DNA of 64,000 nucleotides, taken from the NCBI GenBank assembly GCA_907165135.1, contig OU015567.1:3658001-3722000 (forward strand), given 5' to 3'. The DNA is from Oikopleura dioica. Lineage: Eukaryota > Animalia > Chordata. The first letter of the stretch is position 1. The number at the start of each line of letters is the position of its first letter. Under the pieces are notes generated by a model. The model had not been told where the DNA came from and searched no databases. It was given only the letters and a program-made list of their open reading frames with translations. The translations under genes were made by a program, and so were the position numbers. Positions 46,567 through 64,000 of the stretch are shown here, piece by piece.

Positions 46567-47421
46567 AAAATTTTAGTTCTTGCGAAAATACATGAATATG
46601 GAAGACAGACCAAAGCGATTCAAAACTGATTGTAAAAAATAAATCAAAAAAGGACTTTCGAATTGAAAAAAATGAACTTTGGACCTCGGTAGAGAAAGAT
46701 GAGTGAATGCAGAAATTTAACCCTGGCTCGTCAGGCGCGCATTTTAACAAAAAACGTTGCGCCATAACGGCTGCATTCTAGTTAGAGAAAATGAAATCTG
46801 CGTTAATTAGGTTGTACCACCGTTATTCTTTTATTTTGGCAAATAAAAGGGAAGATGAAAATTATGATTATACGCTCTTATCGTTTGCAAATTATGAATC
46901 AAAAGCAAAATGCGTTTCATTTGAATAATTATGGAATAATGATTTGAACGAAATCGTTGTTGTCTCATTATTTCCTATTTATGGCCAATCAGTTGAGCTA
47001 TTTTGTTATTTTGCTTGTCACAAAACATCTTTTACCTTCTACTTATTCCCTCAATAACTCATTAAAAGGTTGAATAACGGCAACTTCGAGTGGTTTCACG
47101 TTTTTTGTTTTCACCGAGCGCACTCTTTGTTTTTACTCAAGTCAGTTGAAATTAACTCCACGTTAACGCCTATTGTTACCGTAAATATGAATTAAACGAG
47201 GGAGAGGTTGAGTTCCGGTTCCATCAATCAAAAAATGAAAGCGAAAGTTTTTGAGATATTTTTATTCTATTATTCTCTCAAAAAGTCAGTCAGTCACTAG
47301 AATTAAGTCTATTTACAGTGAGTATAAAAGTGAGAAGAAAGATAAGGAAAAGGTTTTGTTTCGCTTGGTCTGTTCAAAGTGTTGTTCAAAAATCGGTCAT
47401 CCAGTGCACGCGATAGATCAT

Positions 47422-48453
47422 TTATCGTCGTCGTCGGGATTTCTTGGATTTGTCGGGCTTGTCAGCTGGGGCAGCATCGGGTCCGGCAGCGGCGTCGGGA
47501 GCTGGGGGACCTTGTCCGGGAGCGCCAAAAGCTTGGGGAGCTGGGCCAGGGCCGAATCCTCCTGGGCCACCTGGTCCTCCGAATCCAGGACCGCCGGGGC
47601 CGCCGGGGCCACCAAAGCCAGGGCCGCCGGGGCCACCAAAACCAGGGCCGCCTGGACCGCCAAGGCCTGGGCCGCCTGGACCACCGAGACCAGGGCCGCC
47701 GGGACCGCCAAAGTCAGCAGCATCCTCAGCTGGAGGAGGGCCAGCAGGGAAACCGCCAGGGAATCCACCTGGGAAGCCACCGGGGAAACCGCCGAAGTCA
47801 GTAGCATCACCCTGAGGAGGAGGGCCAGCGGGGAAACCACCAGCGGGGAATCCGCCAGGGAATCCACCGAATCCACCGGGACCGCCAAAGTCAGCAGCGT
47901 CTTCAGCTGGGGGAGGTCCTGCTGGGAATCCACCGGGGAATCCACCAGGGAATCCACCTGGGAAACCACCGAAGTCGGCAGCGTCACCTTGTGGGGGAGG
48001 TCCAGCAGGGAAGCCACCAGGGAATCCTCCTGCGGGGAATCCACCAGCAGGGAATCCACCGAAATCAGCGGCATCGGCGGCGGGTGGGGGGCCGAATCCT
48101 GGGAAGCCACCTGGGAATGGGAATGGAGATGGGCCGAATCCCTGAGGAGCTTTGGGAGCTTCTTCAGCGTTGTCGGTCTTGTCGCCTTCCTTTGGAGGAG
48201 CGGGGAAAGCGCCGGGGAAAGCACCAGGGAAAGCACCGGGGAATCCGCCGAAGAATGGCTGAGCAGCGGGAGCAGCGGCTTCAGCGTTATCTGTCTTGTC
48301 GCCTTCTTTGGGTGGCTGGGCGAAGGGGAAGGCTTAAATAAACGATAAAGATTTGCTCTCGAAGGATACTTGCTCACCTGGGAAACCTCCGGGTTGTCCG
48401 GGGAAGCCAAATGGCACTGGGGCTGCTGGTGGTGCTTTAGTCTCTTCTGACAT
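47422..48453 (-). CDS. Gly/Pro/Phe low-complexity protein (~328 aa), two exons, basic C-terminus
   Basis: Exon 48378-48453 (MSEETKAPPAAPVPFGFPGQPGGFP) spliced GT-AG in frame to 47422-48332: (GGFP)n, AGPPP(Q/A)xDAADF, (GGPG[L/F])n, ending DKSKKSRRRR*. Third-position variation fits coding in this frame. Confidence 0.85.
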
Positions 48454-48799
48454 ATCTCAAGTTATGTGGAAATGGATAAATATCATCGAATTATATGTTA
48501 TTTTCATTTCCTGGCTATATTTTTAAAGATGATAAAAATTCTTGATTTAGTGATTCAAAACGGAAACGATTTTGCTTGAAAAAAATAATAGAAAAAGGAA
48601 GCCATTGAGTCTAAATTTTATTATCTGACATAGATAGAACTTTTTAGACATACCGTACTTCCATCATAGAATTTTGATGTCGATTTTTATGGAGAAAAGG
48701 TGGTTGTTCAGAAATGGCTCTTTGAGAAATGTGCATATGCTCCGGCGGTCTACGAAATAAAATTTGTCCATTTCAAGTCTCTTAGATAATAAGTGAAAA

Positions 48800-50074
48800 A
48801 TGAAGCTTTCTTTAGCTTTTGGTGCCGTTTCTGCTTTTGAGCTTGCTGCAGTTACTCCCCCTCCCGGATGCCCGTAAGTTTCAAGACTCTTTATATTTCT
48901 ATTTTGATTCTAGAGACCTTGATAAATACGAGATTTGCACGGCAAAATGCTCAGCCGATCTCGACACTTGCAAAGAAGCTTGCAACCCCGACGACTTCAC
49001 ATGTGCCAGTCGTTGTGATGCCGCTGCTCTCGATTGCAACAACGACTGTCCCTGCAGCAACGGTTGTCCCAGCGGCTGCCTAGGCTGTGAAAACCCTATT
49101 TGCTCGACTGACGGAGAGCACCTTTTGATCCTCAATACATACGCCGGTATGGACAATCAGTCTTTCTTGATCGAACTTGCTACCGACATCCACAAAATGG
49201 GCAACTTCAACTACAACATGGAGATCCACGACATTGAGGACTCCTGTTACGCTTTCATGAAGGGCGAGCACTGGTTCCTCGGTGGTTACTACAACGAGCG
49301 AATGATCGCCAAAGTCAACCTTGGTGGCTGCGCAATCGAGCCTCAACAGAAACTTCTCGCCATCACCCACGTTGACGGCTTCTGGGGATCTTGCTCTGTC
49401 TATAATGACCTAACCCACATGTGTTTTGATGCCAATGGCGTTGGTGGCGATCGATGCCAGACTTTCGACGGTGAAGAGGGAGGTCAAGCTGTTCTTCCAT
49501 CTCGATCAAATGCTCCTCATGACTACACTGCCATGGCCGTCTATGACAACAAAATGTGGGTTGTTGGAGGATGCGATCCTGACGGCTTTGACTGCCATAA
49601 TGTCGTTGAGTCATTTGACGGGTCAAGCTGGACTGTTGCCCCTAACCTACCAGTAGCAGAAATTTATGCTCAGACTGTTCTTGGAGATGTGAATGGGCTC
49701 TACTCTATTTCTGGTCGACCAAGCTCTAATAGCCAGAATGTAAGAATCGAATTCAAAAAAATCGTGAATACTTTTCAAGGTGTACAAATTCAATGGAAGC
49801 TCCTGGAGCCTTCTCGGTCTGATGTCTTCCGCTCAAGCAGACGCATTCTACTTTACTTCTGGCAAAATTGTCAGCAATGGACTCGCATATGGCGGAGAAG
49901 AGTAAATAAGGTTACGATTTTCCGGTAATTTATTTTTCTTTAAGCTACATGGAAAAGATTCAATTGAGCGACACTGAATTTTCCTCCGTCAACATTGGAG
50001 TTGCAGCAAACGGTGAAGTGTTCGATCTCTACTACGCGGCGATGATCTTGGTTGATGGAGCAATCTGTATGTAA
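48800..50074 (+). CDS. Secreted Cys-rich N-domain + Kelch-like beta-propeller protein, copy 1
   Basis: MKLSLAFGAVSAFELAA signal; CTAKC..C...C...C..RC...C...CPCSNGCPSGC; Kelch-like HWFLGG and AMAVYDNKMWVVGG...VESFDGSSWTVAPNLP; last exon ends GAICM*. Confidence 0.85.
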
Positions 50075-50324
50075 AACATCTTCTCTCTTGACAATTCTTA
50101 TGCAGCATAAATTTTGCTTAACTTTTACTAAATAAATAAGATATTCATCAATGTATTTGTAAATAATGTGTCATGCGTTTGTTATTTTGTCGACAATAAT
50201 CGTTCAAAATTGGTCTTTGGGAAAAAGCAGATGGCAAGCCCGTCTCAAGACATAAACCGTCAATCATAAGTTTGTTAGACAATTAGACAATAAATTATCG
50301 TTGATAATGATAATTTTTGAAGCA

Positions 50325-51582
50325 ATGAGCGCCGTTTCCGCTTTTGAGCTTGCTGCAGTCACTCCTCCTCCTGGATGCCCGTAAGTAAAAATGGCGGATA
50401 AAGATAAAATAGTAAATTGAATAAGTGACCTTGACAAATTTGAAATTTGTACGGCGAAATGTTCAGCTGATCATGATGCTTGCAAAGCTGGCTGCAGCTC
50501 GGACGATTTCACATGCGTTAGCCGGTGCGATGCTGCTGCTCTTGATTGCAGCAACGCTTGTCCTTGTAACAATGGTTGCCCAAGTGGATGCCTTGGCTGC
50601 GAGAATCCGGTTTGCTCTAGCGAAGAAGAGCATCTCATGATTCTCAACGCTTATTCTGCAATAAGGGATCAGGCGTTTTTGATCGAGCTTGCTTCCGATA
50701 CTCACAAGATTGCCAACTTCAACTACAACGACTTTTTATTTGAAATTGAGGACTCCTGCTATGCATTCATGAATGGCGAGCACTGGTTCCTCGGCGGTTA
50801 CTACAATGAACGACTGGTCGCCAAGGTCAACCTCGGTGGCTGCTCAATCGAGCCTCAGCAAAGTCTTCTCGCCATCACTCATGTCGACGGCTACTATGGA
50901 TCTTGTGCTGTCTACAACGAAATTACACACATGTGTTTCGACTCAAATGGCGTTGGTGCCAATCGTTGCCAAACTTTTGACGGAGAAGACGGTGGTCAAG
51001 CTGTGGTCCAAACTCAATCAAATGCTCCTCACGACTACGCTGCAATGGCCATCTACGACAATAAGATGTGGGTTGTTGGAGGATGCGATCCCGCCGGCTT
51101 CGATTGTCATAATATCGTTGAATCATATGACGGATCGACATGGACCGTCGCTCCGAACATTCCTGTCGAAGAAATTTACTCTCAGACTGTTCTTGGAGAT
51201 GTTTATGGGCTCTACTCAATCTCTGGTCGCTTCAATGGCCGAAATGTAAGATGAAGATTGTAAATAATTCTTCACCATGTCACATGTTTCAGGTCTTCAA
51301 ATTTGATGGAAATTCCTGGTCGCTCCTTGGTTTGATGTCTGAAGCTCAAGCCGGTGCATATTTCTTCACTTCTGGCAAAATTGTTAACAACGGACTTGCA
51401 TATGCTGGAGAAGAGTAAGTATAAAGGATTTGAGTACAAATTTAGTCATTGGTTTTATTTTATATGACTCTATTGTCATCTTTAGCACCATGGAAAAGAT
51501 CCAATTGAGCGACACAAATTTTTCTTCGATCAACATCGATCGATCATCAAAAAAAAACTCTCTCTGCATCCGTGCGGAGTAA
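50325..51582 (+). CDS. Tandem paralogue (copy 2) of the Cys-rich/Kelch-like gene, shortened N-terminus and truncated last exon
   Basis: Colinear with copy 1 exon by exon. Homology stops at 51538, where unrelated sequence replaces the last 25 codons. Confidence 0.8.
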
Positions 51583-51744
51583 GCAGTTTTTGGATTTTTT
51601 GAAGCTAGAGAACTAAGTCACCCCCTCTGCTGGGGGTGAGGAATTATAGAGAATAGAAGTTGAAGATCATCTTTGTAAGTACACCTAGTTGTCGGCTGCT
51701 CTCAATCAGGCGTTAATTGGCAATTAATTTTAGCTCATTAGCTA

Positions 51745-51835
51745 GCCTCAGGGCAAAATTGCGTGCGTGGCGCTGACGCAGCGCATTATCGCAGCCAATC
51801 ACGTCTCTTGAGAGCAGAAGGGAGGTCACGTACCT
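51745..51835 (+). promoter_or_regulatory. Putative internal promoter of the retroelement
   Basis: GC-rich patch with CGCTGACGCA (CRE-like), CAGCCAATCA (CCAAT box) and GTCACGT, upstream of a G-poor leader. Confidence 0.3.
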
Positions 51836-52293
51836 GTCTAGCCGACCGTGTTCGCCTAACATCTTATGATCTTTTGCTTCCACTCGTAATCTCCTCGACT
51901 TAGTCTGATCATCCCTCAGCAATCACTTTTTCATTAGAGTGATTTCTTGGTCTCACTCTTCTCAACTACCACCGTCACCTTTACTTTGTATTATTTTCCC
52001 TTTCAACGTAAACCTTATTAGTTAAAATTTAAAATTCACAATATAGCTTACCCCCGTATCACTCACGCTACCTGCTTGTTACGCTATTCACTTATCACTA
52101 CTCTCGCTTACTTTATTTTCTTAATTCTATTCCTATTACTGTTGGAAGAGCATGTTCTTTTCGCCCATTCGCAGATGTTGTAATGAGTACAGAAGATATG
52201 CTATTTCTTTTCCCAGCTACTTGTAGCTGAAGTGGGTAGGAGACTACCACAAAAGGGCGAGCTGGGTAATTTAAATGCCATCGTGATCCCCTT

Positions 52294-53307
52294 TTGAGCG
52301 AGTATCAGGAGCTGTCTGTTCACAGAAACGTGCTCTACTCTGCTCTGAGACAAATTGGAGCCAGGACTGAGCTGTCTTTTGTTAAGAATGTGATCGTCCC
52401 GCTCTTTGTCAATCCGTGCCATGTCAGCAGAATTGCCGCGCTGTGGGATGGACGGAAAATGCACGTGAGGTTCATCGACAGATGTAAGTCGCTCACCTCC
52501 ATTGTGTTTGCGAACGCATTTTTAAGCACAATTCCGCATGGCAAAGCCAGGAAGACAGACAGCCACAAAACATCATTTAGCAAGTTTGTGGAGAAACTCA
52601 TATGGTGCCTCAGCAGAATTATTTCAGTCAGATCTTGCAAGAGGACTTGCGCAATTCTAGACTGTTCTTTGAAACTGTCCAAAACTGTTAATAAATCCTA
52701 CCCAGAAGGAAACTCTACGTCTGTCTCTCAAGTTCCCCTGGGAGTTGTTATTTGCGTCCCACTTCTTGCTGACCTTAAAAATTTGGTCCTTTCAGAAAGT
52801 GATAAAAGCCATCACGTGATGGCAAGGGTTTTCTCAGTAACTAACTTAGTTCAGGCCTTGGCTCGGATTGTCGTTACGGGAGGAAACTCGGTTGCTGCCG
52901 GCGCAGAATCTCTAGCAGAAGCCATGTTTAATGGATTTGAAATTACCACTCTTGGCTCAGCAAAGCCCGATAAGGTAGGTCATTTACCTCTCGCGGAACT
53001 GATCATGAGTGGTTTTCAGCCCAAAAAGCCCCGCCAAAATCTCAAGCGGCCCAAAACGCTAGCCAAGCTGAAAACTTGGAGAAGTCGATTACGAAAGTCA
53101 TCGATGATCGCGGCAACAAAGGACCGGCTCCGTCAAAGAGTGCGGCAAAGAAACCCGCTGCTAACTCTGCCACATCCAATTCCCAGGATCAAAGGGGAAA
53201 TCGCCCTGCCCGAGGCGGTGGAGCAAAGCGTGGTCGTGGTGGAAAAAGAAGAGGTAGTTGGAATACCAACCCTGATGGTGGTTCGCGAGGAGGGAAGCGA
53301 AATGTAG
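52294..53307 (+). CDS. Retroelement 5' ORF segment a (unknown; probably continues into the -1 frame near 53025)
   Basis: 337-codon open frame with no recognisable motif. The first in-frame ATG is only at ~52459. Confidence 0.4.
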   Translation: MSEYQELSVHRNVLYSALRQIGARTELSFVKNVIVPLFVNPCHVSRIAALWDGRKMHVRFIDRCKSLTSIVFANAFLSTIPHGKARKTDSHKTSFSKFVEKLIWCLSRIISVRSCKRTCAILDCSLKLSKTVNKSYPEGNSTSVSQVPLGVVICVPLLADLKNLVLSESDKSHHVMARVFSVTNLVQALARIVVTGGNSVAAGAESLAEAMFNGFEITTLGSAKPDKVGHLPLAELIMSGFQPKKPRQNLKRPKTLAKLKTWRSRLRKSSMIAATKDRLRQRVRQRNPLLTLPHPIPRIKGEIALPEAVEQSVVVVEKEEVVGIPTLMVVREEGSEM

Positions 53308-53633
53308 GTAGCAAACCTACGTCACGCCCTCCGCCCAATAATGGAAAAACGAAACAAAATCAGAACCCCCTCGACGCCGCCGAAGCCGATGTTCCGGTAG
53401 CTGAAACAGTATCGAAAGACAAGCTTAACAGGCGCAAAGCCACAAGAAATAAGCTGAAGCCTACTCTTCTTAAACCCAAAATGGATGAAATCGAAGAGGA
53501 CGTTAAGTTGAATCTTAACGAAGATGACATCGGGAGAAGCGATGAAGAGAATCTCACTCCTTTTCCGCAAGGTGGAACACCGCTCAAAGCGATGCCGGGT
53601 GACTCTCAAGACCTCTCCCCGAACACAGGTTGA
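52974..53633 (+). CDS. Retroelement 5' ORF segment b: basic RG/RGG-rich disordered region
   Basis: Frame open from 52974: RPARGGGAKRGRGGKRRGSW...GGSRGGKR, followed by an acidic patch. This resembles a nucleic-acid-binding ORF1 region. Confidence 0.6.
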   Translation, partial: GRSFTSRGTDHEWFSAQKAPPKSQAAQNASQAENLEKSITKVIDDRGNKGPAPSKSAAKKPAANSATSNSQDQRGNRPARGGGAKRGRGGKRRGSWNTNPDGGSRGGKRNVGSKPTSRPPPNNGKTKQNQNPLDAAEADVPVAETVSKDKLNRRKATRNKLKPTLLKPKMDEIEEDVKLNLNEDDIGRSDEENLTPFPQGGTPLKAMPGDSQDLSPNTG

Positions 53634-56281
53634 GGAAGGCTCCTGGTGGTGGTAAGTTCTACACCAACGAAAGTGATGCCATCGACAAAGTACCGTACGC
53701 CGACTCTTTCGTCGGCGACGATGCCGCTTCCTCCTACATGTCCCTTGAAACCCCTACGCCAGTGGGAGAAACCAAGCAATTGTTTTCCCAGAAGGACGAA
53801 GGGGTGAACTATATGCTGGAATCAATTAGCGATCTTCTCCAATTTAAACACACCGTCAAGACAATAACCACTGATGAGGTGGCGTTTCATGTGGACAATC
53901 GTTACAAGCGATTCCAGGGACTGGCCCTCAACTTCATCAAAGCTAGCTCGGCTGGAAACGATGAACTCCTAATGGATATCCCTGCAATTTATCCACCGCA
54001 ATGGCGGGAAGAGAAGTATAACGGTCATATTCTCACCAAAGTTAGCCTTTTGGTCTTTTACAACACGCTAAAACGGCTCGCAATTCCAACTGAGAATATC
54101 CAGACCATTATTATCCAACGTACGGATGGCACGATGGTCGAAGATGGCGACACTGATTGGAAAAGAAACTCCGATGCAGTGGTGCGTGGAGTAAGGTTTA
54201 AATTCCTATTGGACTTCATCAAATACATCTTCTTCGCAGTTAAAACGCTGCAGCTTTTTGATCCTGCCAGACTCATGGCAAACACCACTGCTTGGGCAAC
54301 TATCTTCTCCATGCGCGAGTTCGATGGTCAGGGAAAATTTGTGATCAATAATGCTGATGACAAAGGGCTCTACAAGAAGATAAAATATTTCTTCACTCGC
54401 TTCAAATCCTACGTGAATAGCTCTCAAGCGCCAAACTTCACCTTCAAGGAACACTCGATGACCGTAGGTATCTTACCTATGGCGGAGATTTTCTCCTCCG
54501 AGCTGAAGAAAATGAAGTTTGTTAACCCGAATGTTGAAAGCTGCAAAGAAGCACTCGGAGTTGCTTATGATAATCACCATAACCCTCTCTCCGAAGACAA
54601 CCTGGTCAAAAAAGGTCGAGGAAACCTAGGGAAGGCCTATCAGCTCATCCTGGACGCAATTGATAACGAGATCTTTCGCGTGGAAGGAAATGAGCTCTAC
54701 AAGCTTGACGCCCGTCAGCACTTTGATAATAAAATTGAAGAGCAACGAAGCGGCCTGATGCGCGTCACGTTAGGAGACGCCAAAACTCTGGTGGAAGGGC
54801 GAAGCGCCGCCAAAGTACAGAGAAGTAAGATCCGTTTCTTGGGCAGAACCCTGAAAGCCGGAGCTGGTTCCAAATTCATGAACGATGCCCTGTACACCGC
54901 GTCGACAGCAGCTGGAGTGGTGGAGTGCAACCCTGAGTTTAGAAAGGTTGCTAATACTACCGAAGCTTCTGCCTCGAAACTTCAGAAAATGGACGCAGCA
55001 GCCAAGAAGTTGCGAATTGATTTTGGAAATTCTCAAAAAGATATTCGTAAAACCCTTCGGCTAGCGCAGAGAAACCAGGTAGAATCGTCCACCCTGCATT
55101 ATGGAGGTGCTCAGGCACTGAAAAGCATGCAAGAACAAATGGTAGCGATACTCCAGGGGAAAGAAAAGAGCGACATTCTGGAAGAGGCGGCAATCAACGA
55201 CCGCAACGTCAATCAACTAATTGGTGGCGCCAAGTTCATGGCTTTCAATACTAAATTGGAAGACACTACAAATGAACCCTATCTTGTCCTCAAGGATAGA
55301 GTTATCGACCGCCACCAAACTGTTGACCTGATGGGGAAAGAAGCGAATGTTGGTACGATCTTGAAGTCAGTCTTCGAAGGTGTGCCTGAGAAGGAGATAC
55401 CCCAAGGAGAAAAAGACCTCCAACTAGCCATTCATTTGGATTCAGCCGTTAAAAAGTCGGACCAGCAAGCGTCAGATGAAGAAGAAGTCGATATCGACAT
55501 GACGGAACTCGAAGAGCCAGAAAAGGCAAAGCCGGGACCTACCTTCGTATCACCTCCGAGTTCGATCCCCGGAGCCATTAATTCCAACAATGTGTTCGAA
55601 TCTGATGGCCTACCTAGGCCGGTCTTGGATAAGTCGAGCTCAACCCTCAACATGGACGACATGGACGACGATGATCCAGGTTCAAGCTTTTCCATCACGA
55701 GTACGCAATCTCTAGCGTTTGAAATTCCCAATAAGAGTGAATGGGAGGCGCTGGAGTCAATGACCGATATTCCATTGAAGCTAATTGCCTCCACCCCAGC
55801 TAGAAGGCAAGGAATTGTGGTACGCCGACTGGAAACGGCGGGGTCTACAAGCATGAAAGTCATCCCCTTGGACGAATTCGACAAGAGTGAAGTTGCCAGA
55901 TATTCAAGTCCACAAGACTACGTTAAAAAACGTAAGCCGCCGATGTTTGAATCCTGGGACAAGCTCATGCAGCTGGAAAGTTCCGGCGAAAGAAGAGTGG
56001 CCGACATTGAAAATGTCATGATGAAGCTCGCTAAGGTTCCGAAAGGATCCAAACATCAGCAAGCTAGAAAATGGATCTTTGTCTTAGCCGACAACTCCAT
56101 CAAAATCTTCAAGCAGTTTATCCAGCTCTTGAAAGAACCCTCGGGAACTTGGACTAGTCTTGGCTTGGACCAGGACGTGGAGCAGATCGAGGACGGCTTT
56201 AAATTCAAAGAAGGTTCCGCTTGGAAAGCCTTTTATGAAGAAGTGAAATATTTTATACGAGCTTATGAACGACCGCAGTAA
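53630..56281 (+). CDS. Retroelement ORF1-like protein (883 codons), no recognised domain
   Basis: Long intact ORF directly upstream of the APE ORF, with a coiled-coil-like stretch (ASKLQKMDAAAKKLRIDF...) and acidic linkers. Confidence 0.8.
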   Translation: MRKAPGGGKFYTNESDAIDKVPYADSFVGDDAASSYMSLETPTPVGETKQLFSQKDEGVNYMLESISDLLQFKHTVKTITTDEVAFHVDNRYKRFQGLALNFIKASSAGNDELLMDIPAIYPPQWREEKYNGHILTKVSLLVFYNTLKRLAIPTENIQTIIIQRTDGTMVEDGDTDWKRNSDAVVRGVRFKFLLDFIKYIFFAVKTLQLFDPARLMANTTAWATIFSMREFDGQGKFVINNADDKGLYKKIKYFFTRFKSYVNSSQAPNFTFKEHSMTVGILPMAEIFSSELKKMKFVNPNVESCKEALGVAYDNHHNPLSEDNLVKKGRGNLGKAYQLILDAIDNEIFRVEGNELYKLDARQHFDNKIEEQRSGLMRVTLGDAKTLVEGRSAAKVQRSKIRFLGRTLKAGAGSKFMNDALYTASTAAGVVECNPEFRKVANTTEASASKLQKMDAAAKKLRIDFGNSQKDIRKTLRLAQRNQVESSTLHYGGAQALKSMQEQMVAILQGKEKSDILEEAAINDRNVNQLIGGAKFMAFNTKLEDTTNEPYLVLKDRVIDRHQTVDLMGKEANVGTILKSVFEGVPEKEIPQGEKDLQLAIHLDSAVKKSDQQASDEEEVDIDMTELEEPEKAKPGPTFVSPPSSIPGAINSNNVFESDGLPRPVLDKSSSTLNMDDMDDDDPGSSFSITSTQSLAFEIPNKSEWEALESMTDIPLKLIASTPARRQGIVVRRLETAGSTSMKVIPLDEFDKSEVARYSSPQDYVKKRKPPMFESWDKLMQLESSGERRVADIENVMMKLAKVPKGSKHQQARKWIFVLADNSIKIFKQFIQLLKEPSGTWTSLGLDQDVEQIEDGFKFKEGSAWKAFYEEVKYFIRAYERPQ

Positions 56282-58232
56282 AAACTCGCAGATGTTCAAT
56301 GCTGCTACCAACTACACTGTGCTTAACTGGGTTCCTAAACCAAGTGTGAGGGGGCATATTACATTCATCAATGGAATCGACGGCCTGGTGTCTAACAAAG
56401 GGCTGAAGTTCTCTCACATTCCAATGAGAGCGCTGTGTAGGTCCTTTACCTACTTTGTCTGTCGAGGCGATGGTATGAGAGCCACTTTTGGGCAAATCGA
56501 CCATGGCCTGGCGGGCAATCATATTACTGGAACACCCGACAACGTCATCGTTGAGCCGGTAAGCCCTCTTGAAAGAGAGACAAGAGTTGAAATGGTTAAA
56601 AATCTTATAAAGTGTAGATATATGAGAGATAACTGCTCGGAATGGAATATACCAGTTGACGTCATTCTTAAAAAGGCGGAAACTGACATTTACCTTAAAG
56701 ATTTTGTCACCCAGGTCAACTCTTTTCTGCTCAAGGATGTCACATCGATAAATTTTCATCGATGGATGCATTCCCCTGATTGTTTTAAAAATTTCAATCC
56801 TAGGGGAATTCTTAAACCGTCGGTCCATGAAGATGAAATTTCACGCAGCAAAGAAAAAATTACAATCAAATCACTTGTTAGGGAAAAGCGAGAGGCAATA
56901 CTCTTGGCGCGTACAAATGATCTGTTAAAAAAAGCAATCGTCCCCTTCTCACCCTTCATCTCTTACAATATTCTCTCACCAATGGACTTCATTCACGCCT
57001 GCAACCTGCCCCCTGAAGTTACTCAACTAATGGAGGTCACGGACCTATCTTACAGAGGTAAGGCGTTACCTTCGAATGAAGACCCTTGCGAACTTGAGCG
57101 AAAAGTCAATGAGCACAATAATGCGCTTATAACTAAATCCCCAAAACTCAAGATTGTTTTTGCCAACCTGGGCAAAGTGGGTTTGGCAAGAATTCATGAA
57201 CTCACGAATGAGCTCTTTGACATCCCAATCATCGTGCTCAGTGAAATGTATGCCGACCATGATCTCCTGTCAAACCGTAAGCACTGGCCGAACGGTTACA
57301 CCATTTTCCTTCCTGATCCCTCTCCGACGGGCAATTTAGTGTTCGTCTGCCTCATAGTAAGAAATGAGATTAAGCTCATCCAAAGGCACTCATTAGCACA
57401 AAATCTCCTGTGCAAGTTGGACTTTAAAGGCACGAACCTTTGGGTTTGCGGCATATATCACTTCATCGATAACAAATTCGACGGATACGCAACCAAGTTC
57501 AATTTGGACAGGAGCGTCTTTCTGGACAGCTTACAGGCAGTCAATAACATCTGCAAGGATGAGCCACAAATAATTGGGGGTGACTTTAATAACTCAATCT
57601 TAGACCCGAGGAATCCTAAGGAAGAAAGGGAGGCCAACCTTATCCTAAATTCACTTTCAAACCACCTTATCCACTCGGGTATGGTGAGCTTTAGGAAGAC
57701 GGTTGGGGAGAAAAATAGACTGATCGAGTCGGCAATCGATCATGTCTTCAGTAAAAACATTGTTCATCTTACAACAACTAATTTGGATTTAGTCACGAGA
57801 CTCAGGGCCGATGGGCACATTGGCCTCAAATCCACTTTCAATGTTCAAGGGCCGGACGATGTTTACTGGGAAATTAGAAGAGTGCGTCTTAAGCCTGATC
57901 CTGTGACGTTTTATCAAGAATCCATGAAGGTAGATCACTTACTTACCAAAAATAGGATTCTGCACGATAGAGGTCTCCTCCCAGACTTTTGTATCACAAA
58001 TGCAGGTGTGGAAGCACTAAATGAGCTTTCTGAAAGAATGCAGCCATATGTCGAGAAAGTAATTGCGGTTAAACCCGACAATCCGCGCAGATCACCTCTC
58101 GCGTCCGACTATTTAAAACATACTTTCGCGTTACAAGCTGTTTTAGTGCAATTATTGGCTGCTAGTTTCAGAGTTAGGAATAAGAATAGGGTTATCAGGC
58201 GGGTGCGTGAATGTATTAAAAACTACAACTGA
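56265..58232 (+). CDS. Apurinic-endonuclease-like (EEP) domain preceded by ~290 aa of unknown sequence (ORF2 5' half)
   Basis: LKIVFANLG, IIVLSEM, IIGGDFN, SAIDHVF: the four catalytic blocks of LINE APE. Confidence 0.9.
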   Translation: MNDRSKNSQMFNAATNYTVLNWVPKPSVRGHITFINGIDGLVSNKGLKFSHIPMRALCRSFTYFVCRGDGMRATFGQIDHGLAGNHITGTPDNVIVEPVSPLERETRVEMVKNLIKCRYMRDNCSEWNIPVDVILKKAETDIYLKDFVTQVNSFLLKDVTSINFHRWMHSPDCFKNFNPRGILKPSVHEDEISRSKEKITIKSLVREKREAILLARTNDLLKKAIVPFSPFISYNILSPMDFIHACNLPPEVTQLMEVTDLSYRGKALPSNEDPCELERKVNEHNNALITKSPKLKIVFANLGKVGLARIHELTNELFDIPIIVLSEMYADHDLLSNRKHWPNGYTIFLPDPSPTGNLVFVCLIVRNEIKLIQRHSLAQNLLCKLDFKGTNLWVCGIYHFIDNKFDGYATKFNLDRSVFLDSLQAVNNICKDEPQIIGGDFNNSILDPRNPKEEREANLILNSLSNHLIHSGMVSFRKTVGEKNRLIESAIDHVFSKNIVHLTTTNLDLVTRLRADGHIGLKSTFNVQGPDDVYWEIRRVRLKPDPVTFYQESMKVDHLLTKNRILHDRGLLPDFCITNAGVEALNELSERMQPYVEKVIAVKPDNPRRSPLASDYLKHTFALQAVLVQLLAASFRVRNKNRVIRRVRECIKNYN

Positions 58233-60943
58233 TCACAGCCAAAGTCAGGCAACTTGATCGCAAAATGCTTGTAGTTGGAAATGACTGTATATCTACAATT
58301 ATTTCCCAAAATCAAGCCTGGAAAATCGCGCGCAGATGGATGAAAAATGCCTCCCCGGGAACTTTCGAGAAACCGGTTAATCTGATCGCTGACGAACTTC
58401 TAGGCCTCCAGCTATCAACGGTCCCGCCGTCGAGCGACAGGGGTTTTAACGCTCACCCAGTCTTGCCGCCAGAGAAACGTTTTCGGCTAACTAAGGTGAG
58501 CTTTCGCAAAATTAGCCCAAATCCCGCCTTCTTAGACTTCTATAAAAGGAGCAAAGCGAAAACCGCCGACCTTAAGGGAATTTCTAGAGAAATGACGGAA
58601 AAGCTGCCGCTCCAGTCGTTCGTCAACCTCATCCTAGAGCCCTTCCGCGATGGCACCACTAACTGTAAGTTTGTTGATAGTTGGAGGGAAAATAAGGTGG
58701 TACCTATTCCTAAGCCAGACGGTCGCGCCAGACCAATTACTGTTGTGCCTTTTCACCTGGGGCACCAGGAGAAGGCACAATGCGAGCTCTTTGCCGCATT
58801 TGTCGAGCATTATGGGCTTGTACCACGTGAACAATTTGGTTTTCGACGCAGTAGAAGCTGCGGTGGTGCAGCCTTTGCCGCCAAATTCGCCATCGACTCG
58901 CTTTCAGGGGATTTGGACGATGATGGTAAGTCATTGACCTACCCTGCTTGGGCAATGGTCAGTTGTGATGCCAAAAACGCCTTCGGAGTTATTCCACATG
59001 ATAAATTATTACTTGCGTTGAGCGGAATAGTCTCCGAGGCGTTTTTGGCATACATCAAAGAATTCCTCCCCCGGAGTTTTAGAGCGGTTATGAACGGGTT
59101 TGTCAGCGACAAAAAGGTCTTACCCCCTTGGGGCCTTCCACAAGGCTCAAGTTTAAGCCCTGTCTTTTACATCTACTACTGCTCGATCCTCAATAACAAA
59201 ATGATTATAGATCCAATTGATGAGGAGGCGCAGGAAATGGATGCTGAAATCGACTCACAAGTCGCTGAAGAAGGTTGCAAACCTACCTCTCACCAGCTGC
59301 TTGGCCTAGCGCTAAGCTCAGGTGAGCAAAAAGTCAAAATGGGTACAAGGCTGTGCCCGCACGGCATCAGTACTCATGTTGGCTTATCAGTTTCATTCGC
59401 AGATGATTACATTGCTATAGTTGGTGGATTCACGAGAGCCGCCACGTTCCGAGCAATCAAAACCTCCAGCAACAATGTACTCTGCGAACTGCAAAGAAGC
59501 GGAATCCGCACTGCACCCCACAAATCCAGCTTGGTCATGTTCTGTAAGTCAACGTTTTCGGAGCGGGACAATGCCCTAACAGAAAAATACTTTACAGATA
59601 AATCCGGCCAAACAGGAATTTCACTTGGTGGGGTTTTTGTAAAAACTTCAGAGAAGGTTAAGTACTTAGGAATCTGGCTTGAATCAGTCAATGGAACGGT
59701 CTCTTTTGACCTTCACCATAAGACGATTCGAGGCAGATTTCGAAATGTGGTGGAACAAATTAGCATACTTTTCGGTGCAATGCCCCGAGAGCTTCTGGCC
59801 TGCATTGTCAGAGCGCAACTAGGGGGCCTAGCCTTACATGGTGCTGATTATATTAACCCTCCAAAAAAGCACATGATGATTGGAATGCAAAGCCTCTATT
59901 CGAACGCCCTCTGGCAACGTAGGTCAGTGCCCTATTTTCTGGAGAGTAAACGTCTTGAGCTGAAGTGGAAAGATGCCCAATTTTTTCAAAAATTCAAGGA
60001 ATCATTTCATGAGAGATTTCATGGCCATTGCCCTGAACAGGAGTTTATGGCTGTTCGAATTTTTGGACAAATCCCCCTTCACCTTATGTATCTAAAGCAA
60101 GCCACCATGTCCATCTACAAAGCTTTTCGGTACAACACTCCAGAGTTGCCCGCCGAGCTTGTGCGCTCTGCACTAATGGTCTGTAATAGATTTGGTGAAC
60201 CCATTTGTAAACTGCCGGAGTTATTTCTTGCTGAAAGACTGGAACGGACTTTCATCGACCGCTCGAGATTTACGGAAGGTAGAATACCTGGCCGTTTAAC
60301 TCGAAGTGAGCAAGAAGCAATCTTCGCGGCAAAAACCTTTCACCTAAGATTCTCAGCACTAATCGACACTGATGTTGTCGAGATCAAGTTCATCACCCCC
60401 AAGTGTAGTGCCGATGACCATTATAAGATCGATAAAAAGGCCTGGCCGTGGTACCTAGAAGGATTCTTTAATAGCCTACCTACTGACATTAGGAAAGCTT
60501 TTATCACCTTTAGCTTCGGCTCGGAGCTGAAGGCAGCATTAGCAACAGCACACTTCCATAATGAAGACAGCTTTGTTTGTAATGTATGCGTTCGACCAGT
60601 CGGTGTTAAACATGATAACGGACTTAGGATACCCCTCGTATTACACAACCCAGATGAACATGATCGCAACGCTTACGACTTGCTTACCAAAAACCAGAGA
60701 GCAGCAGGGATCCAAGCTCTCATTGCGTGGTTCTTTGCCACAAAGCAAGAGAGATTGCGCATCTCATCTGCTCTGAAGTTTAACAGCTTTTTCCAGTTAA
60801 TGGACAAGATCTCTCTGGTGGAAGGCCTTAACAATATCATTAAAGGGCTACTCTTTGACCCGAAATTTAGAGAAGGGGTTAGGAAGGTAATTTACCTACA
60901 GGACAATGAACTGTTCGGCCCTGTCAACAATAAGGATTACTGA
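58220..60943 (+). CDS. Non-LTR reverse transcriptase (ORF2 3' half; frame open from 58220, ATG 58265)
   Basis: WRENKVVPIPKP, RPITVV, QFGFRRSRSC, CDAKNAFGVIPH, PQGSSLSP, FADD, HKSSLVMF, KYLGIWL. C-terminal HFH..CNVC..H. Confidence 0.95.
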   Translation, partial: KLQLITAKVRQLDRKMLVVGNDCISTIISQNQAWKIARRWMKNASPGTFEKPVNLIADELLGLQLSTVPPSSDRGFNAHPVLPPEKRFRLTKVSFRKISPNPAFLDFYKRSKAKTADLKGISREMTEKLPLQSFVNLILEPFRDGTTNCKFVDSWRENKVVPIPKPDGRARPITVVPFHLGHQEKAQCELFAAFVEHYGLVPREQFGFRRSRSCGGAAFAAKFAIDSLSGDLDDDGKSLTYPAWAMVSCDAKNAFGVIPHDKLLLALSGIVSEAFLAYIKEFLPRSFRAVMNGFVSDKKVLPPWGLPQGSSLSPVFYIYYCSILNNKMIIDPIDEEAQEMDAEIDSQVAEEGCKPTSHQLLGLALSSGEQKVKMGTRLCPHGISTHVGLSVSFADDYIAIVGGFTRAATFRAIKTSSNNVLCELQRSGIRTAPHKSSLVMFCKSTFSERDNALTEKYFTDKSGQTGISLGGVFVKTSEKVKYLGIWLESVNGTVSFDLHHKTIRGRFRNVVEQISILFGAMPRELLACIVRAQLGGLALHGADYINPPKKHMMIGMQSLYSNALWQRRSVPYFLESKRLELKWKDAQFFQKFKESFHERFHGHCPEQEFMAVRIFGQIPLHLMYLKQATMSIYKAFRYNTPELPAELVRSALMVCNRFGEPICKLPELFLAERLERTFIDRSRFTEGRIPGRLTRSEQEAIFAAKTFHLRFSALIDTDVVEIKFITPKCSADDHYKIDKKAWPWYLEGFFNSLPTDIRKAFITFSFGSELKAALATAHFHNEDSFVCNVCVRPVGVKHDNGLRIPLVLHNPDEHDRNAYDLLTKNQRAAGIQALIAWFFATKQERLRISSALKFNSFFQLMDKISLVEGLNNIIKGLLFDPKFREGVRKVIYLQDNELFGPVNNKDY

Positions 60944-60981
60944 ACTAAAACCTCGTTGACTAACTCCCACCTTCCTCGTTC

Positions 60982-62847
60982 TTGTTTAAGGGCCACTCGC
61001 GGATACTTTTGGTGGACTCAGTTGTAATTCAACCTCTTTTAGGCACATATATCGGTGCGCAGAGGCTGATGGCAATGAAACTTCGAATTCCACCTATATT
61101 CGTGGATGAAATCGCTCTCTATTCTCCATCATCGCGAACCATTTCCCTGTGGCCGGTTTTCGTCCTTCGCAGTCCTATCTTCACGGAATTACTCCAAGGA
61201 AAGAATATAATCCCGTCCGGCATGATCGACTCTCCAGAAAGGTCTACTGCATCGATCAGGAGCTTCGCTTCAACAGACCAAAGAGAGCTTCATCTTTACG
61301 CGGGCGCCTTCCCGAACTTCTTCTCCTCGGAGTTCGACGTAGCCGAATGGATTGCAGGCAAACCTTTGCTAGCAGACGTGATCGATGAGGCACCGCTTGA
61401 ACTCGTCGACGAGTGGTACAATATCTGGCGCTCGGGTAAGCTGCTCAAGCTGAAAAATGCCAACAACGGTCGTCCGCTGGGCGATGCTGATGCGACAGCT
61501 CTAATTGCAAGCATGCTTGCGAACCAGAAGGAAGGTCCGGTACCTACCTTCGACCGCCGGCTTGCGAAGATCGCTGGAAGACTTGTCACTGCGACTTATG
61601 ATGCCGACTTTGGTTGCCAACTCATTGACTTTGCCCTCCAATCGAATGATTTCCGCTTTGTCGACAGTCTCGACGCGTTGTGGAGATCAAACGGCATTAG
61701 CTGGAAGACAACTGAAGCTGTACTGAGCCGACCACTCGGCTGGCTCTGCCTCGACTCAATCAACAAAGCCAACCTAATTGAACAGGCAACCTCCCTGGTA
61801 ACGCCGCTGTCTAGTCAAGCCATCGAAGCCCTAATGCGCATTACCTGTCAGCCGACAGTGTACGAGATGATCAAAGCGCGAGACCTCATGGCGTCGTCGC
61901 TCTGGGAGGAAGGCTTATCCGAAATGCATCAATTTCTCGCCAATCCGCAAAACTTCACCGAGGAGTCGCGAATTGAGCGTTTAGCGGCCTTCACAAATTT
62001 CAACGAAGATACCCTCAAAGTAGTCTCAGATGTCTTTGAAGCTAACATCGGGATGTCAGCTGTGGACTTCTTCGATGAAGCCATAGTCTGGGCTACCAGA
62101 AATTTCTGTCAGTGTGGAAAGGTGATCAACTCGCACGAAGCAACTAATGGAGACGACTTGGCTGAAGCAGCCTTCATGGCCAAAATGTGGGCGATGGAGG
62201 TTTTCCAGATCTCGTATGACATCGAAAAGAAGGACAAAGAATTCGACCACAGAGTCTTCCACAGAATCGCCGCTAGACGTGAGTTTAAAAATGCCCACCT
62301 CAGCTGCTTCTCTTACTACATCACTCGTGGCCTGGGACTAGTTGGTTGCTTCGGTTCGATTATGAAGTGGTCGACCGAAATTATAGTTAAACATATGTTT
62401 ATTACCTACTTTACTAAAGCCCAGGCAATTCTCTCTGAAAAACCTTTCGGCAACTTCTCCAAATGGGCAGCAATTGCCACACTCCGTTTCTCAACACCGT
62501 TCTACGGTTCACCATCTTCAACCGGATTAATTTCGCACACGGTTGAGGAATTGGCTGAATTGGGAGAGGGCGAGTTACTTGAATGGCTCACCAGTAATAT
62601 CCAAGGCTTGACCGTTCTGGTTACTAATCGGTCCTCGAACGGTCCAACAGTGCTCAATAACTGCGCTTTCCCAACTAGCCCCACTTTCTCGTCTTTAGTT
62701 ATCTACAATAATGCCAAAAATCTGATTACGAGGTGGATCTTTATATACAAGCTCCAAAGTCCTCCGAGCCTAATGGCCTGGGGAAAGGTCGATTCCCGCG
62801 TTCAGACATGTGAGCTTTTCTCATATCGCCATGAACACCCACGGTAA
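60982..62847 (+). CDS. Orphan ORF3 downstream of RT (first ATG 61069, 592 aa)
   Basis: Intact intronless ORF on the same strand and with similar composition. The frame opens 20 nt after the RT stop. No recognised motif. Confidence 0.8.
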   Translation: MFKGHSRILLVDSVVIQPLLGTYIGAQRLMAMKLRIPPIFVDEIALYSPSSRTISLWPVFVLRSPIFTELLQGKNIIPSGMIDSPERSTASIRSFASTDQRELHLYAGAFPNFFSSEFDVAEWIAGKPLLADVIDEAPLELVDEWYNIWRSGKLLKLKNANNGRPLGDADATALIASMLANQKEGPVPTFDRRLAKIAGRLVTATYDADFGCQLIDFALQSNDFRFVDSLDALWRSNGISWKTTEAVLSRPLGWLCLDSINKANLIEQATSLVTPLSSQAIEALMRITCQPTVYEMIKARDLMASSLWEEGLSEMHQFLANPQNFTEESRIERLAAFTNFNEDTLKVVSDVFEANIGMSAVDFFDEAIVWATRNFCQCGKVINSHEATNGDDLAEAAFMAKMWAMEVFQISYDIEKKDKEFDHRVFHRIAARREFKNAHLSCFSYYITRGLGLVGCFGSIMKWSTEIIVKHMFITYFTKAQAILSEKPFGNFSKWAAIATLRFSTPFYGSPSSTGLISHTVEELAELGEGELLEWLTSNIQGLTVLVTNRSSNGPTVLNNCAFPTSPTFSSLVIYNNAKNLITRWIFIYKLQSPPSLMAWGKVDSRVQTCELFSYRHEHPR

Positions 62848-63046
62848 AATTACCGCCGGTGTTAACACAACCGTTTCAGAGTTCTTCCCGGTACCTTCGG
62901 AGGTCGCTGACCTACTCCGGCACCTTCGTGCAGTCAGTGCTCCGGGGTTTTCCCACTGTTTGAAGAAGAGAGCAATCGAGCGGATTCAATCCCACAGTTG
63001 GAACTCTTGTCTCCGTGAGTTTTGCCGGCTCTTCAGGCTCTGGTAA
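62831..63046 (+). CDS. Small ORF4 (71 aa) overlapping the ORF3 stop
   Basis: The ATG at 62831 sits in a 17-nt overlap that nearly copies the ORF1/ORF2 overlap. MNTHGKITAG...CLREFCRLFRLW*. Confidence 0.45.
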   Translation: MNTHGKITAGVNTTVSEFFPVPSEVADLLRHLRAVSAPGFSHCLKKRAIERIQSHSWNSCLREFCRLFRLW

Positions 63047-63781
63047 TGGCGAAGATATCTTCAATCGTTTTATTTAATCCCAATACTCTACGTCATTAAA
63101 GAATTTTACCATCCTCCCTGAAAACCATCAAATCGCTCTCATCTCCTTTTCCTCTTTTCGGTCAGGGTGACGGAGTACATTGTAATTACCGTAGCCCTTT
63201 ATAAACCCTCGCTCTTGCAGCTGGACCAGGAAATGTAGTCTAAGTTATGCTTTTGTCAACCGTATTTTATCTTAAAAATTGTTTTTTTACACGCCCTTTT
63301 GCGTCCTTCCCAGTTTATTTCATCGTCCGGCCTTAAACCAGCTCCCTGTGTTTTATTTTAGCTTCCAGATTCCATAACTAACTTATTCTTTTTCTAATTT
63401 ATTACCAACTATAAATAGCAATCACCCTAAATCAGGGTTAGGCCCCTTTTGCGATCTCTCCGCTAACCTTAAATTAAAACCAAATACTTCTGCTTCGCCC
63501 CTTTTTGCTGCTCGTTCTATAATTTACTCTTATGCCGCGCTAACTCACTCAAATGCATAAATAAAATTTCTTTGCTCAATTTAAGTAATACTTCAACAAA
63601 ACCGGCAGTCAAGATTTCTGACTGTTGGGACGGGGTTTGCTTTTATTTGCATTTATTGAGTTATACTGGAGATCTTGCAGGTTTGCAAGTAATCGCAGGC
63701 ACAGCTTTTCTTTAGAACAGGAGATTAAACAGCAACTGAACTTCCATAGGAATATAATGGTAGGTCAGTGTCATACCTCAA

Positions 63782-64000
63782 TCAAGTGGTTTTCAAGATG
63801 CTGGTTTCGAGTAGCATAAAGCGATCTGGCAACGCGAGGGGCACATCAGATGACAGGGACACTGTGTAGGTGCGCCCCTGGCCAGAATAGTAGAAAGTGT
63901 TGTCAGTCATGTCGGGTGCCGTTCGTGGTTTCCGGGAGCTGACGATTCCGCCCTTTCGGTAGAATCCGACGACGGTAAGAGCAAATATGCTCATCATGCG
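63782..64000 (-). CDS. 3' end of a convergent ORF entering from beyond the window
   Basis: The frame is open to the window edge (...FALTVVGFYRKGGIVSS...LETSILKTT*). GC-richer, no intron seen. Confidence 0.35.
   Translation of the reverse strand, partial: RMMSIFALTVVGFYRKGGIVSSRKPRTAPDMTDNTFYYSGQGRTYTVSLSSDVPLALPDRFMLLETSILKTT

What the first reader, a model, noticed from the sequence alone, without database searches (positions are those of the whole stretch)
51540..63600. ~12-kb LINE-type retroelement with a polycistronic, virus-like gene array
Seen: one intronless block with ORFs at 52294-53307, 52974-53633, 53630-56281, 56265-58232 (APE), 58220-60943 (RT), 60982-62847 and 62831-63046. All are on + and abut or overlap, with no internal stops over ~10.7 kb. 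Established: APE-RT LINEs usually carry one or two ORFs (about 3-8 kb) with RT last; Odin is the LINE family described from Oikopleura. Inference: this is a young or still-selected, unusually large lineage carrying extra genes on both sides of the pol region.
Basis: partly seen in the sequence, partly recalled or inferred. Interest (0 to 1): 0.85.

Follow-up and report, generated by a model that had tools for sequence, protein, structure and literature searches.

The report
Giant LINE carrying an antisense gene
The ORF block is real and belongs to a LINE-type retrotransposon of Oikopleura dioica, but the element is about 18.4 kb long, runs past the window end, and carries a conserved, intron-containing gene on the opposite strand, an architecture I know of in no other LINE.

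Summary
The seven + strand open frames exist as listed. The window is O. dioica OKI2018_I69 chr2.

- **Boundaries.** A paralogous, uninterrupted copy of the host Kelch-motif gene serves as an empty site. The insert starts at window 51537. It ends 5.9 kb beyond the window, at window-equivalent 69911, with AATAAA plus A17. That makes 18,375 bp, with no LTR or TIR and a TSD of 0-1 nt.
- **Family layout.** Eight relatives were found (O. dioica Okinawa and Bergen, marine metagenomes). They share a giant ORFa (N-terminal region, novel N domain, APE, RT; one frame in two relatives), a separate post-RT ORFb, and a convergent multi-exon gene of about 1,300 aa. A conserved 3' terminus follows.
- **This copy.** ORFa is spread over five frames: four frame changes and no stops. 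ORF boundaries differ between relatives, so the seven-cistron reading is not an ancestral design.
- **Similarity.** No viral similarity was found. The extra proteins match no known family.
- **Extra feature.** A conserved RNA hairpin lies in the RT-coding region.

Whether published Odin descriptions already include this layout could not be checked.

The parts
51537..64000 (+). Window part of the inserted retroelement. The whole insert is window 51537 to window-equivalent 69911 (L002 2946-21320; OU015567.1 about 3,709,537-3,727,911), 18,375 bp.
   Evidence: Empty-site comparison with the paralogous tandem unit. AATAAA plus A17 at L002 21291-21320. No terminal direct or inverted repeats.
51537..52269 (+). 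5' leader, with no long open frame. It starts with a short stretch (including an A9 run) that may be junction filler.
   Evidence: No DNA similarity to the 5' regions of relatives.
52270..60943 (+). ORFa-equivalent: variable N-terminal region, conserved N domain, APE and RT. It is one ORF of 2872 aa in L003 and 2623 aa in L005. In this copy it is spread over five successive open frames (four frame changes, no in-frame stop, no large indel).
   Evidence: Length 8.65 kb against 8.62 kb in L003.
53714..54910 (+). Conserved N domain of unknown fold or function (about 400 aa). It is the part of ORFa shared by all family members.
   Evidence: phmmer hits P0009-P0014. The AF2 model is confident for about residues 51-350. 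No PDB, BFVD or Pfam match.
57114..57824 (+). APE (EEP-type) endonuclease core.
   Evidence: Pfam. Invariant N/E/D-N/D-H motif columns in 6 members.
58706..59191 (+). Reverse transcriptase: the Pfam-matched stretch. The RT-bearing part of ORFa continues to 60943, with a conserved C-terminal region.
   Evidence: RVT_1 at 2e-10, 7 of 7 members. The profile's only PDB hits are R2 proteins.
58968..59051 (+). Stable RNA hairpin inside the RT-coding region (28-nt arms). It is conserved at the homologous position in L003, L006 and L001.
   Evidence: -44.8 kcal/mol, z -8.2; 7 pairs with compensatory double changes.
60964..62847 (+). ORFb: a separate post-RT cistron of about 590-627 aa and unknown function. 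Cys-x-Cys...His columns are invariant.
   Evidence: Homologous intact ORFs of 631-777 aa sit directly after pol in L001, L003, L004, L005, L006, L007 and L010. No Pfam or PDB match.
62774..63046 (+). Short seventh open frame of unproven status.
   Evidence: No homologue. Its length is within chance for a 90-codon frame.
63047..63781 (.). Spacer between the convergent genes. It holds an internal AATAAA at 63560.
63782..64000 (-). Last coding exon of the antisense multi-exon gene (gene model L002 15191-20280, window-equivalent 63782-68871, 1266 aa). The rest lies beyond the window.
50306..51536 (+). Host neighbour: the second unit of a tandem Kelch-motif gene array, cut by the insertion. Its remainder resumes at L002 21321.

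Best explanation
The block is the 5' two-thirds of one 18.4-kb non-LTR (LINE-type) retrotransposon that inserted into a tandem Kelch-motif gene of O. dioica.

Shown:
- The insert is bounded by host sequence on both sides and ends in AATAAA plus a pure A17 tail on the + strand.
- Its family has a fixed layout: leader, giant ORFa (variable N-terminal region, novel N domain, APE, RT), a separate ORFb, then a convergent, intron-containing gene of about 1,300 aa, about 0.6-1 kb of further sequence, and a conserved 30-nt terminus.

Inferred mechanism:
- A full-length sense RNA of about 18 kb is made and reads through internal AATAAA motifs.
- ORFa supplies APE and RT for target-primed reverse transcription primed at the poly(A) tail.
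- ORFb is translated as a second cistron by an unknown route.
- The antisense gene is expressed from its own promoter in the 3' end of the element and is spliced. Its introns survive copying because they are antisense to the template RNA.

The window copy has four frame changes in ORFa, so as assembled it would not yield the single ORFa product that L003 and L005 encode.
For: - **Source.** The window is identical to OKI2018_I69 chr2.
- **Insertion.** Empty-site alignment and poly(A) junction. No LTR or TIR.
- **Enzymes.** APE and RT.
- **Conserved order.** N domain, APE and RT sit in one frame in L003 and L005, with ORFb after pol in all members.
- **Antisense gene.** It is homologous, in the same orientation, downstream of WIN, L001, L004, L005, L006 and L010. 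Its similarity ranking matches that of RT: L004-L005 are closest and WIN-L001 next.
- **Introns.** Between L004 and L005, 9 of 11 gaps between conserved blocks are interrupted in both loci, several with the same frame transition and with GT-AG candidates of 40-70 nt. The gene is fragmented even in L005, whose sense ORFs are intact.
- **3' terminus.** AATAAA plus an A-run also follows the antisense gene in L001 and L004. The last 30 nt are 90% identical between WIN and L001 despite only 34% RT identity.
Against: - No near-identical second copy and no allelic empty site was available. The empty site is a paralogue at about 75-83% identity.
- The TSD is 0-1 nt.
- No transcript data exist, so the 18-kb RNA, ORFb translation and antisense expression are all inferred.
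- The antisense gene could not be shown for L003 (the contig ends) or L007-9 (no detectable similarity in the 2.5 kb available).
- All extra proteins lack any known domain, so their roles are unknown.
- The frame changes could be assembly errors in a Nanopore-based assembly. They are not enriched in homopolymers.
Confidence: 0.8

Rival explanations
1. One reading: a 12-kb LINE ending near 63.6 kb whose seven frames are separate cistrons of a polycistronic, virus-like array.
For: The seven frames exist. An AATAAA lies at 63560. L007-9 carry a four-ORF array that is identical in three independent assemblies. No stop codon occurs in 10.7 kb although the frame changes four to five times, which is somewhat unexpected for random decay (inference).
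Against: Host sequence resumes only at window-equivalent 69912, after A17. L003 and L005 have the first five frames as one ORF, and boundaries in L004, L006, L007 and L010 lie at different places. The second frame has no ATG in its first 169 codons. There is no viral similarity.
Confidence: 0.08
2. A LINE of about 12 kb plus a 3' transduction: the antisense gene is flanking host DNA carried along by read-through in this copy only.
For: Read-through past a weak internal poly(A) signal is a known LINE behaviour (established for L1; own knowledge). An AATAAA lies at 63560. The antisense gene has introns, like a host gene.
Against: The same gene sits in the same orientation behind at least five other, deeply diverged members in two cryptic species, and it co-diverges with RT. 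The terminal 30 nt beyond it are conserved. A single ancient transduction at the origin of the family remains possible and is compatible with the best explanation.
Confidence: 0.05
3. Not a mobile element but an old host gene cluster (domesticated RT, partner genes and a convergent gene) spread by segmental duplication.
For: Copy number is low. All known copies are 25-45% identical at protein level, yet several keep very long intact ORFs, implying long-term selection. Only paralogous evidence exists for the insertion.
Against: The insert is precise, poly(A)-terminated and splits a tandem gene unit. Flanking genes differ at every locus: trypsin, C2/MUN and SET-domain neighbours. The APE catalytic columns and the RT motifs are retained. 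One member is identical across three metagenome and Logan assemblies, with contigs breaking at its 5' end.
Confidence: 0.05

Closest known systems
Odin, the non-LTR retrotransposon clade described from O. dioica (Volff et al. 2004, as cited in PMC4122922 and PMC8008620)
   Same: Same host. It is an APE+RT non-LTR element. The reviews name only one non-LTR clade in this genome, so the Bergen relatives L001 and L010 are probably Odin-type (inference).
   Different: Membership was not tested. No Odin reference sequence or structural description was available. PMC8008620 reports LINE/Odin as almost absent from this very assembly, so these copies were not recognised as Odin by repeat annotation.
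Canonical APE-type LINEs (L1, RTE, CR1, I, Jockey)
   Same: APE upstream of RT, a Cys/His-rich region after RT, no terminal repeats, a poly(A) 3' end and insertion into host DNA.
   Different: Those are typically 3-8 kb with one or two ORFs and RT last (own knowledge). Here the element is 18.4 kb, has an unknown N-terminal part of about 1,300 aa, a post-RT ORFb and an antisense spliced gene. By profile search the RT is so divergent that its only PDB hits are R2 proteins, at E 0.003.
Drosophila TART telomeric LINE and Dictyostelium TRE5-A (own knowledge, not tested here)
   Same: Long non-LTR elements with a promoter at the 3' end that drives antisense transcripts. TART antisense RNA is spliced.
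   Different: No large conserved antisense protein-coding gene is described for them.
Human L1 ORF0 (own knowledge)
   Same: An antisense ORF within a LINE.
   Different: ORF0 is about 70 aa, lies in the 5' UTR, is primate-specific and has no introns of its own. Here the gene is about 1,300 aa, multi-exon, at the 3' end and conserved across the family.
Antisense genes of LTR retroelements (extra ORFs of plant Tat/Ogre Ty3-gypsy lineages; deltaretrovirus antisense genes) (own knowledge)
   Same: The principle is the same: an antisense gene, sometimes spliced, is carried through reverse transcription because its introns are not spliced from the sense genomic RNA.
   Different: Those are LTR elements or retroviruses with gag, protease and integrase. 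None of these is present here.

Membership tests
APE-type non-LTR retrotransposon (LINE) | Reverse transcriptase of the non-LTR type | tested here: met
   RVT_1 at 2e-10 in the window and 7 of 7 members. The YxDD-type box is present in the translation. The profile's only PDB hits are R2 retrotransposon proteins.
APE-type non-LTR retrotransposon (LINE) | EEP/APE endonuclease N-terminal to RT | tested here: met
   The window copy is below the Pfam cut-off (19.2 against 27.4 bits), but relatives pass Exo_endo_phos. The catalytic-motif columns are invariant in 6 members, including the window copy.
APE-type non-LTR retrotransposon (LINE) | No LTRs or TIRs; the 3' end is a poly(A) tail at the junction with host DNA | tested here: met
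   No terminal repeats in L002 2700-21600. AATAAA plus A17 abuts the resumed host sequence. The same is seen in L001 and L004.
APE-type non-LTR retrotransposon (LINE) | Target-site duplication flanking the insert | tested here: inconclusive
   The paralogue comparison allows 0-1 nt only. An allelic empty site was not available.
APE-type non-LTR retrotransposon (LINE) | Dispersed copies at unrelated sites | tested here: met
   Four loci on four chromosome records of OKI2018_I69, two Bergen contigs and metagenome contigs, with different neighbours. All are deeply diverged and no recent sister copy was seen.
Odin clade | RT groups with Odin reference sequences in a phylogeny | not testable with these tools
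   No Odin sequence or Repbase/Dfam library was at hand. The papers that describe Odin are not held.
Odin clade | Published ORF set and length match | not testable with these tools
   Held papers give only the name and host.
Retrovirus-like or virus-like element | Capsid, protease, integrase or envelope-like genes, or LTRs | tested here: not met
   No such Pfam domain. No PDB or BFVD fold match for the N-domain model. No relative in IMG/VR. No LTRs.
Designed polycistronic array of seven cistrons | ORF boundaries conserved among relatives | tested here: not met
   Boundaries within the ORFa-equivalent: 0 in L003 and L005, 1 in L006 and L010, 2 in L004 and L007-9, 4 in the window copy, at non-corresponding places. 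Only the pol/ORFb boundary is shared by all.

The most novel reading that the evidence does not exclude
This is a previously undescribed architecture of autonomous non-LTR retrotransposon. The elements are about 18 kb, to my knowledge the largest LINEs. Their unit includes, besides a roughly 2,600-2,900-aa ORFa and a post-RT ORFb, a large conserved antisense protein-coding gene. That gene's spliceosomal introns are propagated through retrotransposition because they are antisense to the template RNA. There is also a conserved RNA hairpin in the RT-coding region. All of this persists as several ancient low-copy lineages in the most compact animal genome known.
Probability: 0.5. Interest if true: 0.9.

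Novelty: new variant of a known kind. Interest (0 to 1): 0.78.

Why it matters
LINEs are regarded as minimal elements of one or two sense ORFs. A lineage that stably carries about 2,000 aa of extra sense coding sequence plus a spliced antisense gene of about 1,300 aa would widen what a non-LTR element can carry. It would be a natural counterpart of the antisense-intron cassettes used as laboratory reporters.

It also raises the question of what the three unknown proteins do for the element or against host control, in a genome under extreme pressure for compaction.

In practice, the public OKI2018_I69 gene models fuse host Kelch exons and element ORFs (the 1899-aa and 927-aa models), and repeat annotation missed the family. 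These loci therefore need re-annotation.

Tried and rejected
- **Pfam.** Nothing for the first three frames, ORFb, the seventh frame or ten antisense exon pieces.
- **PDB by sequence.** Nothing useful for the RT and APE frames singly, nor for profiles of the N domain, APE and ORFb.
- **Word-indexed protein search.** Nothing for the third frame or ORFb apart from the locus's own gene model. Only the exhaustive phmmer run found relatives.
- **Structure.** Single-sequence AF2 of ORFb was unusable (pLDDT 36). The N-domain model found no fold neighbour in PDB or BFVD.
- **Collection scans.** The metagenome scans returned nothing, or only the known contig. The viral-contig scan returned nothing.
- **Non-coding RNA.** Rfam and tRNA scans of the element found nothing inside it.
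- **Other comparisons.** The 5' leaders of family members share no DNA similarity. The first two frames and the seventh have no homologue in relatives. The large antisense exons are S/T/P/E-rich and unalignable.
- **Assembly-error test.** The frame-overlap zones are not enriched in homopolymers.
- **Coding test.** The codon-usage test for the first two frames favours their open frames. It is biased by stop codons in the other frames, so I give it little weight.
- **Literature.** Volff 2004 and Denoeud 2010 are not held, and no search returned Naville 2019.
Full report
**Source and observation.** The RT frame's best database hit is an O. dioica OKI2018_I69 chr2 gene model. The locus fetched for it, L002 (OU015567.1 3,706,592-3,730,910), is 100% identical to window 48592-64000 and adds 8,910 bases beyond the window end. 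Below, 'window-equivalent' means the L002 position plus 48,591. All seven + strand open frames named in the finding exist at the stated coordinates and abut or overlap. Upstream, no ORF exceeds 369 aa in 51.5 kb. Pfam finds a sub-threshold APE match in the fourth frame and RVT_1 (2e-10) in the fifth. It finds nothing in the others.

**Relatives.** Word-indexed searches found only the locus's own gene model and one Bergen protein, P0002, which is 34% identical. The exhaustive phmmer run with the third frame found six relatives. Three of them are 2,500-2,900-aa proteins that also carry APE and RT. Their loci and tblastn with the window's frames give eight further loci:
- L003: a JGI marine metagenome contig.
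- L004, L005, L006: three other chromosome records of the same Okinawa genome.
- L001, L010: two Bergen assemblies.
- L007-L009: one element, 99.9-100% identical in two ENA metagenome assemblies and one Logan assembly.

The order N domain, APE, RT, ORFb is the same in all of them, at 20-36% identity to the window.
- In L003 (2872 aa) and L005 (2623 aa), everything up to the end of RT is one ORF.
- L006 and L010 have two ORFs there.
- L004 and L007-9 have three.
- The boundaries do not correspond between members.
- Only the pol/ORFb boundary is universal, with an ATG 53-545 nt after the pol stop.

The window's first five frames, 8.65 kb, equal ORFa of L003, 8.62 kb. As assembled, this copy has four frame changes in ORFa, no in-frame stop and no large indel. 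The frame-overlap zones are not enriched in homopolymers, so a simple homopolymer assembly error is not indicated. Read-level data are needed. The second frame has no ATG in its first 169 codons, which argues against seven independent cistrons. The first two frames and the seventh have no detectable homologue. They occupy the position of the variable N-terminal part of ORFa, which is 160-478 aa in relatives.

**The element is longer than the finding.**
- Minus-strand genes directly downstream of the + strand block are homologous between the window locus, L001, L004, L005, L006 and L010, always in the same relative orientation.
- Their similarity ranking mirrors that of RT. L004-L005 are closest in both (45% RT identity; 540 bits), and WIN-L001 come next.
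- The gene is in pieces of 90-430 aa in every copy, including L005, whose sense ORFs are intact.
- Between L004 and L005, 9 of 11 gaps between conserved blocks are interrupted in both, several with the same frame transition and with GT-AG candidates of 40-70 nt.
- These are therefore conserved introns, not decay.
Exon pieces were searched separately by reference and matched nothing in Pfam.
- The conserved part is the C-terminal half and includes a Cys-rich motif. The N-terminal half is low-complexity.

**Boundaries.**
- The upstream neighbour is a tandem array of Kelch-motif genes, and a further unit lies after the element.
- Aligning the end of unit 1 with unit 2 shows that host sequence stops at window 51536.
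- It resumes at L002 21321, immediately after AATAAA, 8 nt and a pure A17 run.
- The insert is therefore 18,375 bp, window 51537 to window-equivalent 69911.
- It allows a TSD of 0-1 nt and has no terminal direct or inverted repeats.
- L001 and L004 also show AATAAA plus A12 and A15, 0.7-1.0 kb beyond the antisense gene.
- The last 30 nt are 90% identical between WIN and L001 although their RTs are only 34% identical.
- The antisense gene thus lies inside a poly(A)-terminated retroelement.

**What the parts are.**
- APE: the catalytic-motif columns are invariant across six members, and relatives pass the Pfam cut-off.
- RT: 7 of 7 members match RVT_1. A family profile reaches only R2 proteins in the PDB, at E 0.003, so the RT is a very divergent non-LTR type.
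- N domain: AF2 with seven sequences gives a confident alpha/beta domain at about residues 51-350. It has no neighbour in PDB or BFVD and no PDB sequence match.
- ORFb: homologous in eight members, with invariant Cys-x-Cys and His columns, but no Pfam or PDB match.
- Nothing supports a viral affinity.

**Mechanism (inferred).**
- A full-length sense RNA must pass five internal AATAAA motifs and the convergent gene, then end at the terminal signal.
- ORFa provides APE and RT for target-primed reverse transcription.
- ORFb is a downstream cistron. Its route of translation is unknown. In this trans-splicing, operon-rich species a spliced-leader route is conceivable, but that is my speculation.
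- The antisense gene would be transcribed from the last 0.6 kb or so of the element and spliced. Its introns are retained in new copies because they are antisense to the template.
- An ancient 3' transduction is a plausible origin of that gene.

**Age.** The pure A17 tail and the absence of stops suggest a recent copy. The four frame changes are then either inherited from a source that worked with them, errors of the assembly, or fast decay. I cannot tell which.

**Comparison with the known.**
- Held papers say only that Odin is the Oikopleura-specific non-LTR clade (PMC4122922).
- They also say that LINE/Odin is almost absent from this assembly's repeat annotation, with 44% of repeats unclassified (PMC8008620).
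- The papers that describe Odin's structure are not held, so the finding's refutation clause ('Odin already has this ORF set') remains untested.

**Noticed in passing.** A very stable hairpin lies in the RT-coding region at 58968-59051, with -44.8 kcal/mol and z -8.2. It recurs at the homologous codons in L003, L006 and L001 with compensatory changes. It is absent in L004, L005, L007 and L010.

- Each frame was translated and searched on its own.
- In one search I put window 40001-64000 and the adjoining bases of the same record (from L002) into one file, to have a single coordinate system. This is the natural contiguous sequence, unaltered.
- The tblastn and tblastx tables print bounds of separate matches and no residue paths.
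- Early on, I reasoned from such bounds about the interval in which one frame change lies. I stopped there, and this report gives counts only.

Noticed in passing
window 58968-59051; L003 7655-7755; L006 16052-16152; L001 1901-2001: A long, near-perfect RNA hairpin sits inside the RT-coding region. Its 5' arm is formed by the codons of the D-A-x-N-A-F-G motif. It is conserved with compensatory changes in one sub-lineage of the family (z -8.2, -8.7, -5.1, -3.8) and absent in L004, L005, L007 and L010. Its function is unknown.
   Followed up: partly
window 48799-51536 and L002 21321-22924: A tandem array of Kelch-motif genes with a period of about 1,512 bp and 74-83% identity. Unit 2 is split by the insertion. 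Another family member lies about 5 kb upstream of the L004 element in the opposite orientation, which is either coincidence or a target preference.
   Followed up: partly
window 47251-48410: A 62% GC stretch of nested 12/24/84/177-nt tandem repeats, open on both strands (365 and 330 aa), Gly/Pro-rich, with no Pfam match. It is probably a repetitive structural protein gene.
   Followed up: no
window 45916-46566: An exon-sized ORF matching galactose-3-O-sulfotransferase (3e-25).
   Followed up: no
L002 209-7690 and 10001-14319 (window 48800-56281 and 58592-62910): The public OKI2018_I69 gene models are artefacts here. One 1899-aa model fuses host Kelch exons with element frames. Another, of 927 aa (P0001), joins part of the RT-bearing frame to ORFb across an invented intron.
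   Followed up: partly
L007 1-291, L008 1-219; L008 about 4560-5350: The metagenome member has tandem repeats of about 50 nt at its 5' end, where three independent contigs all break. One assembly has an internal duplication of about 0.8 kb.
   Followed up: no
window 61051-61068 against L001 3910-3927: The protein-level similarity of ORFb to its L001 homologue begins a few codons upstream of the first ATG in both. This hints at a non-ATG start or a conserved nucleotide signal.
   Followed up: no
L002 23202-23273 (beyond the window): A tRNA-Pro(AGG) gene lies downstream of the third Kelch unit.
   Followed up: no
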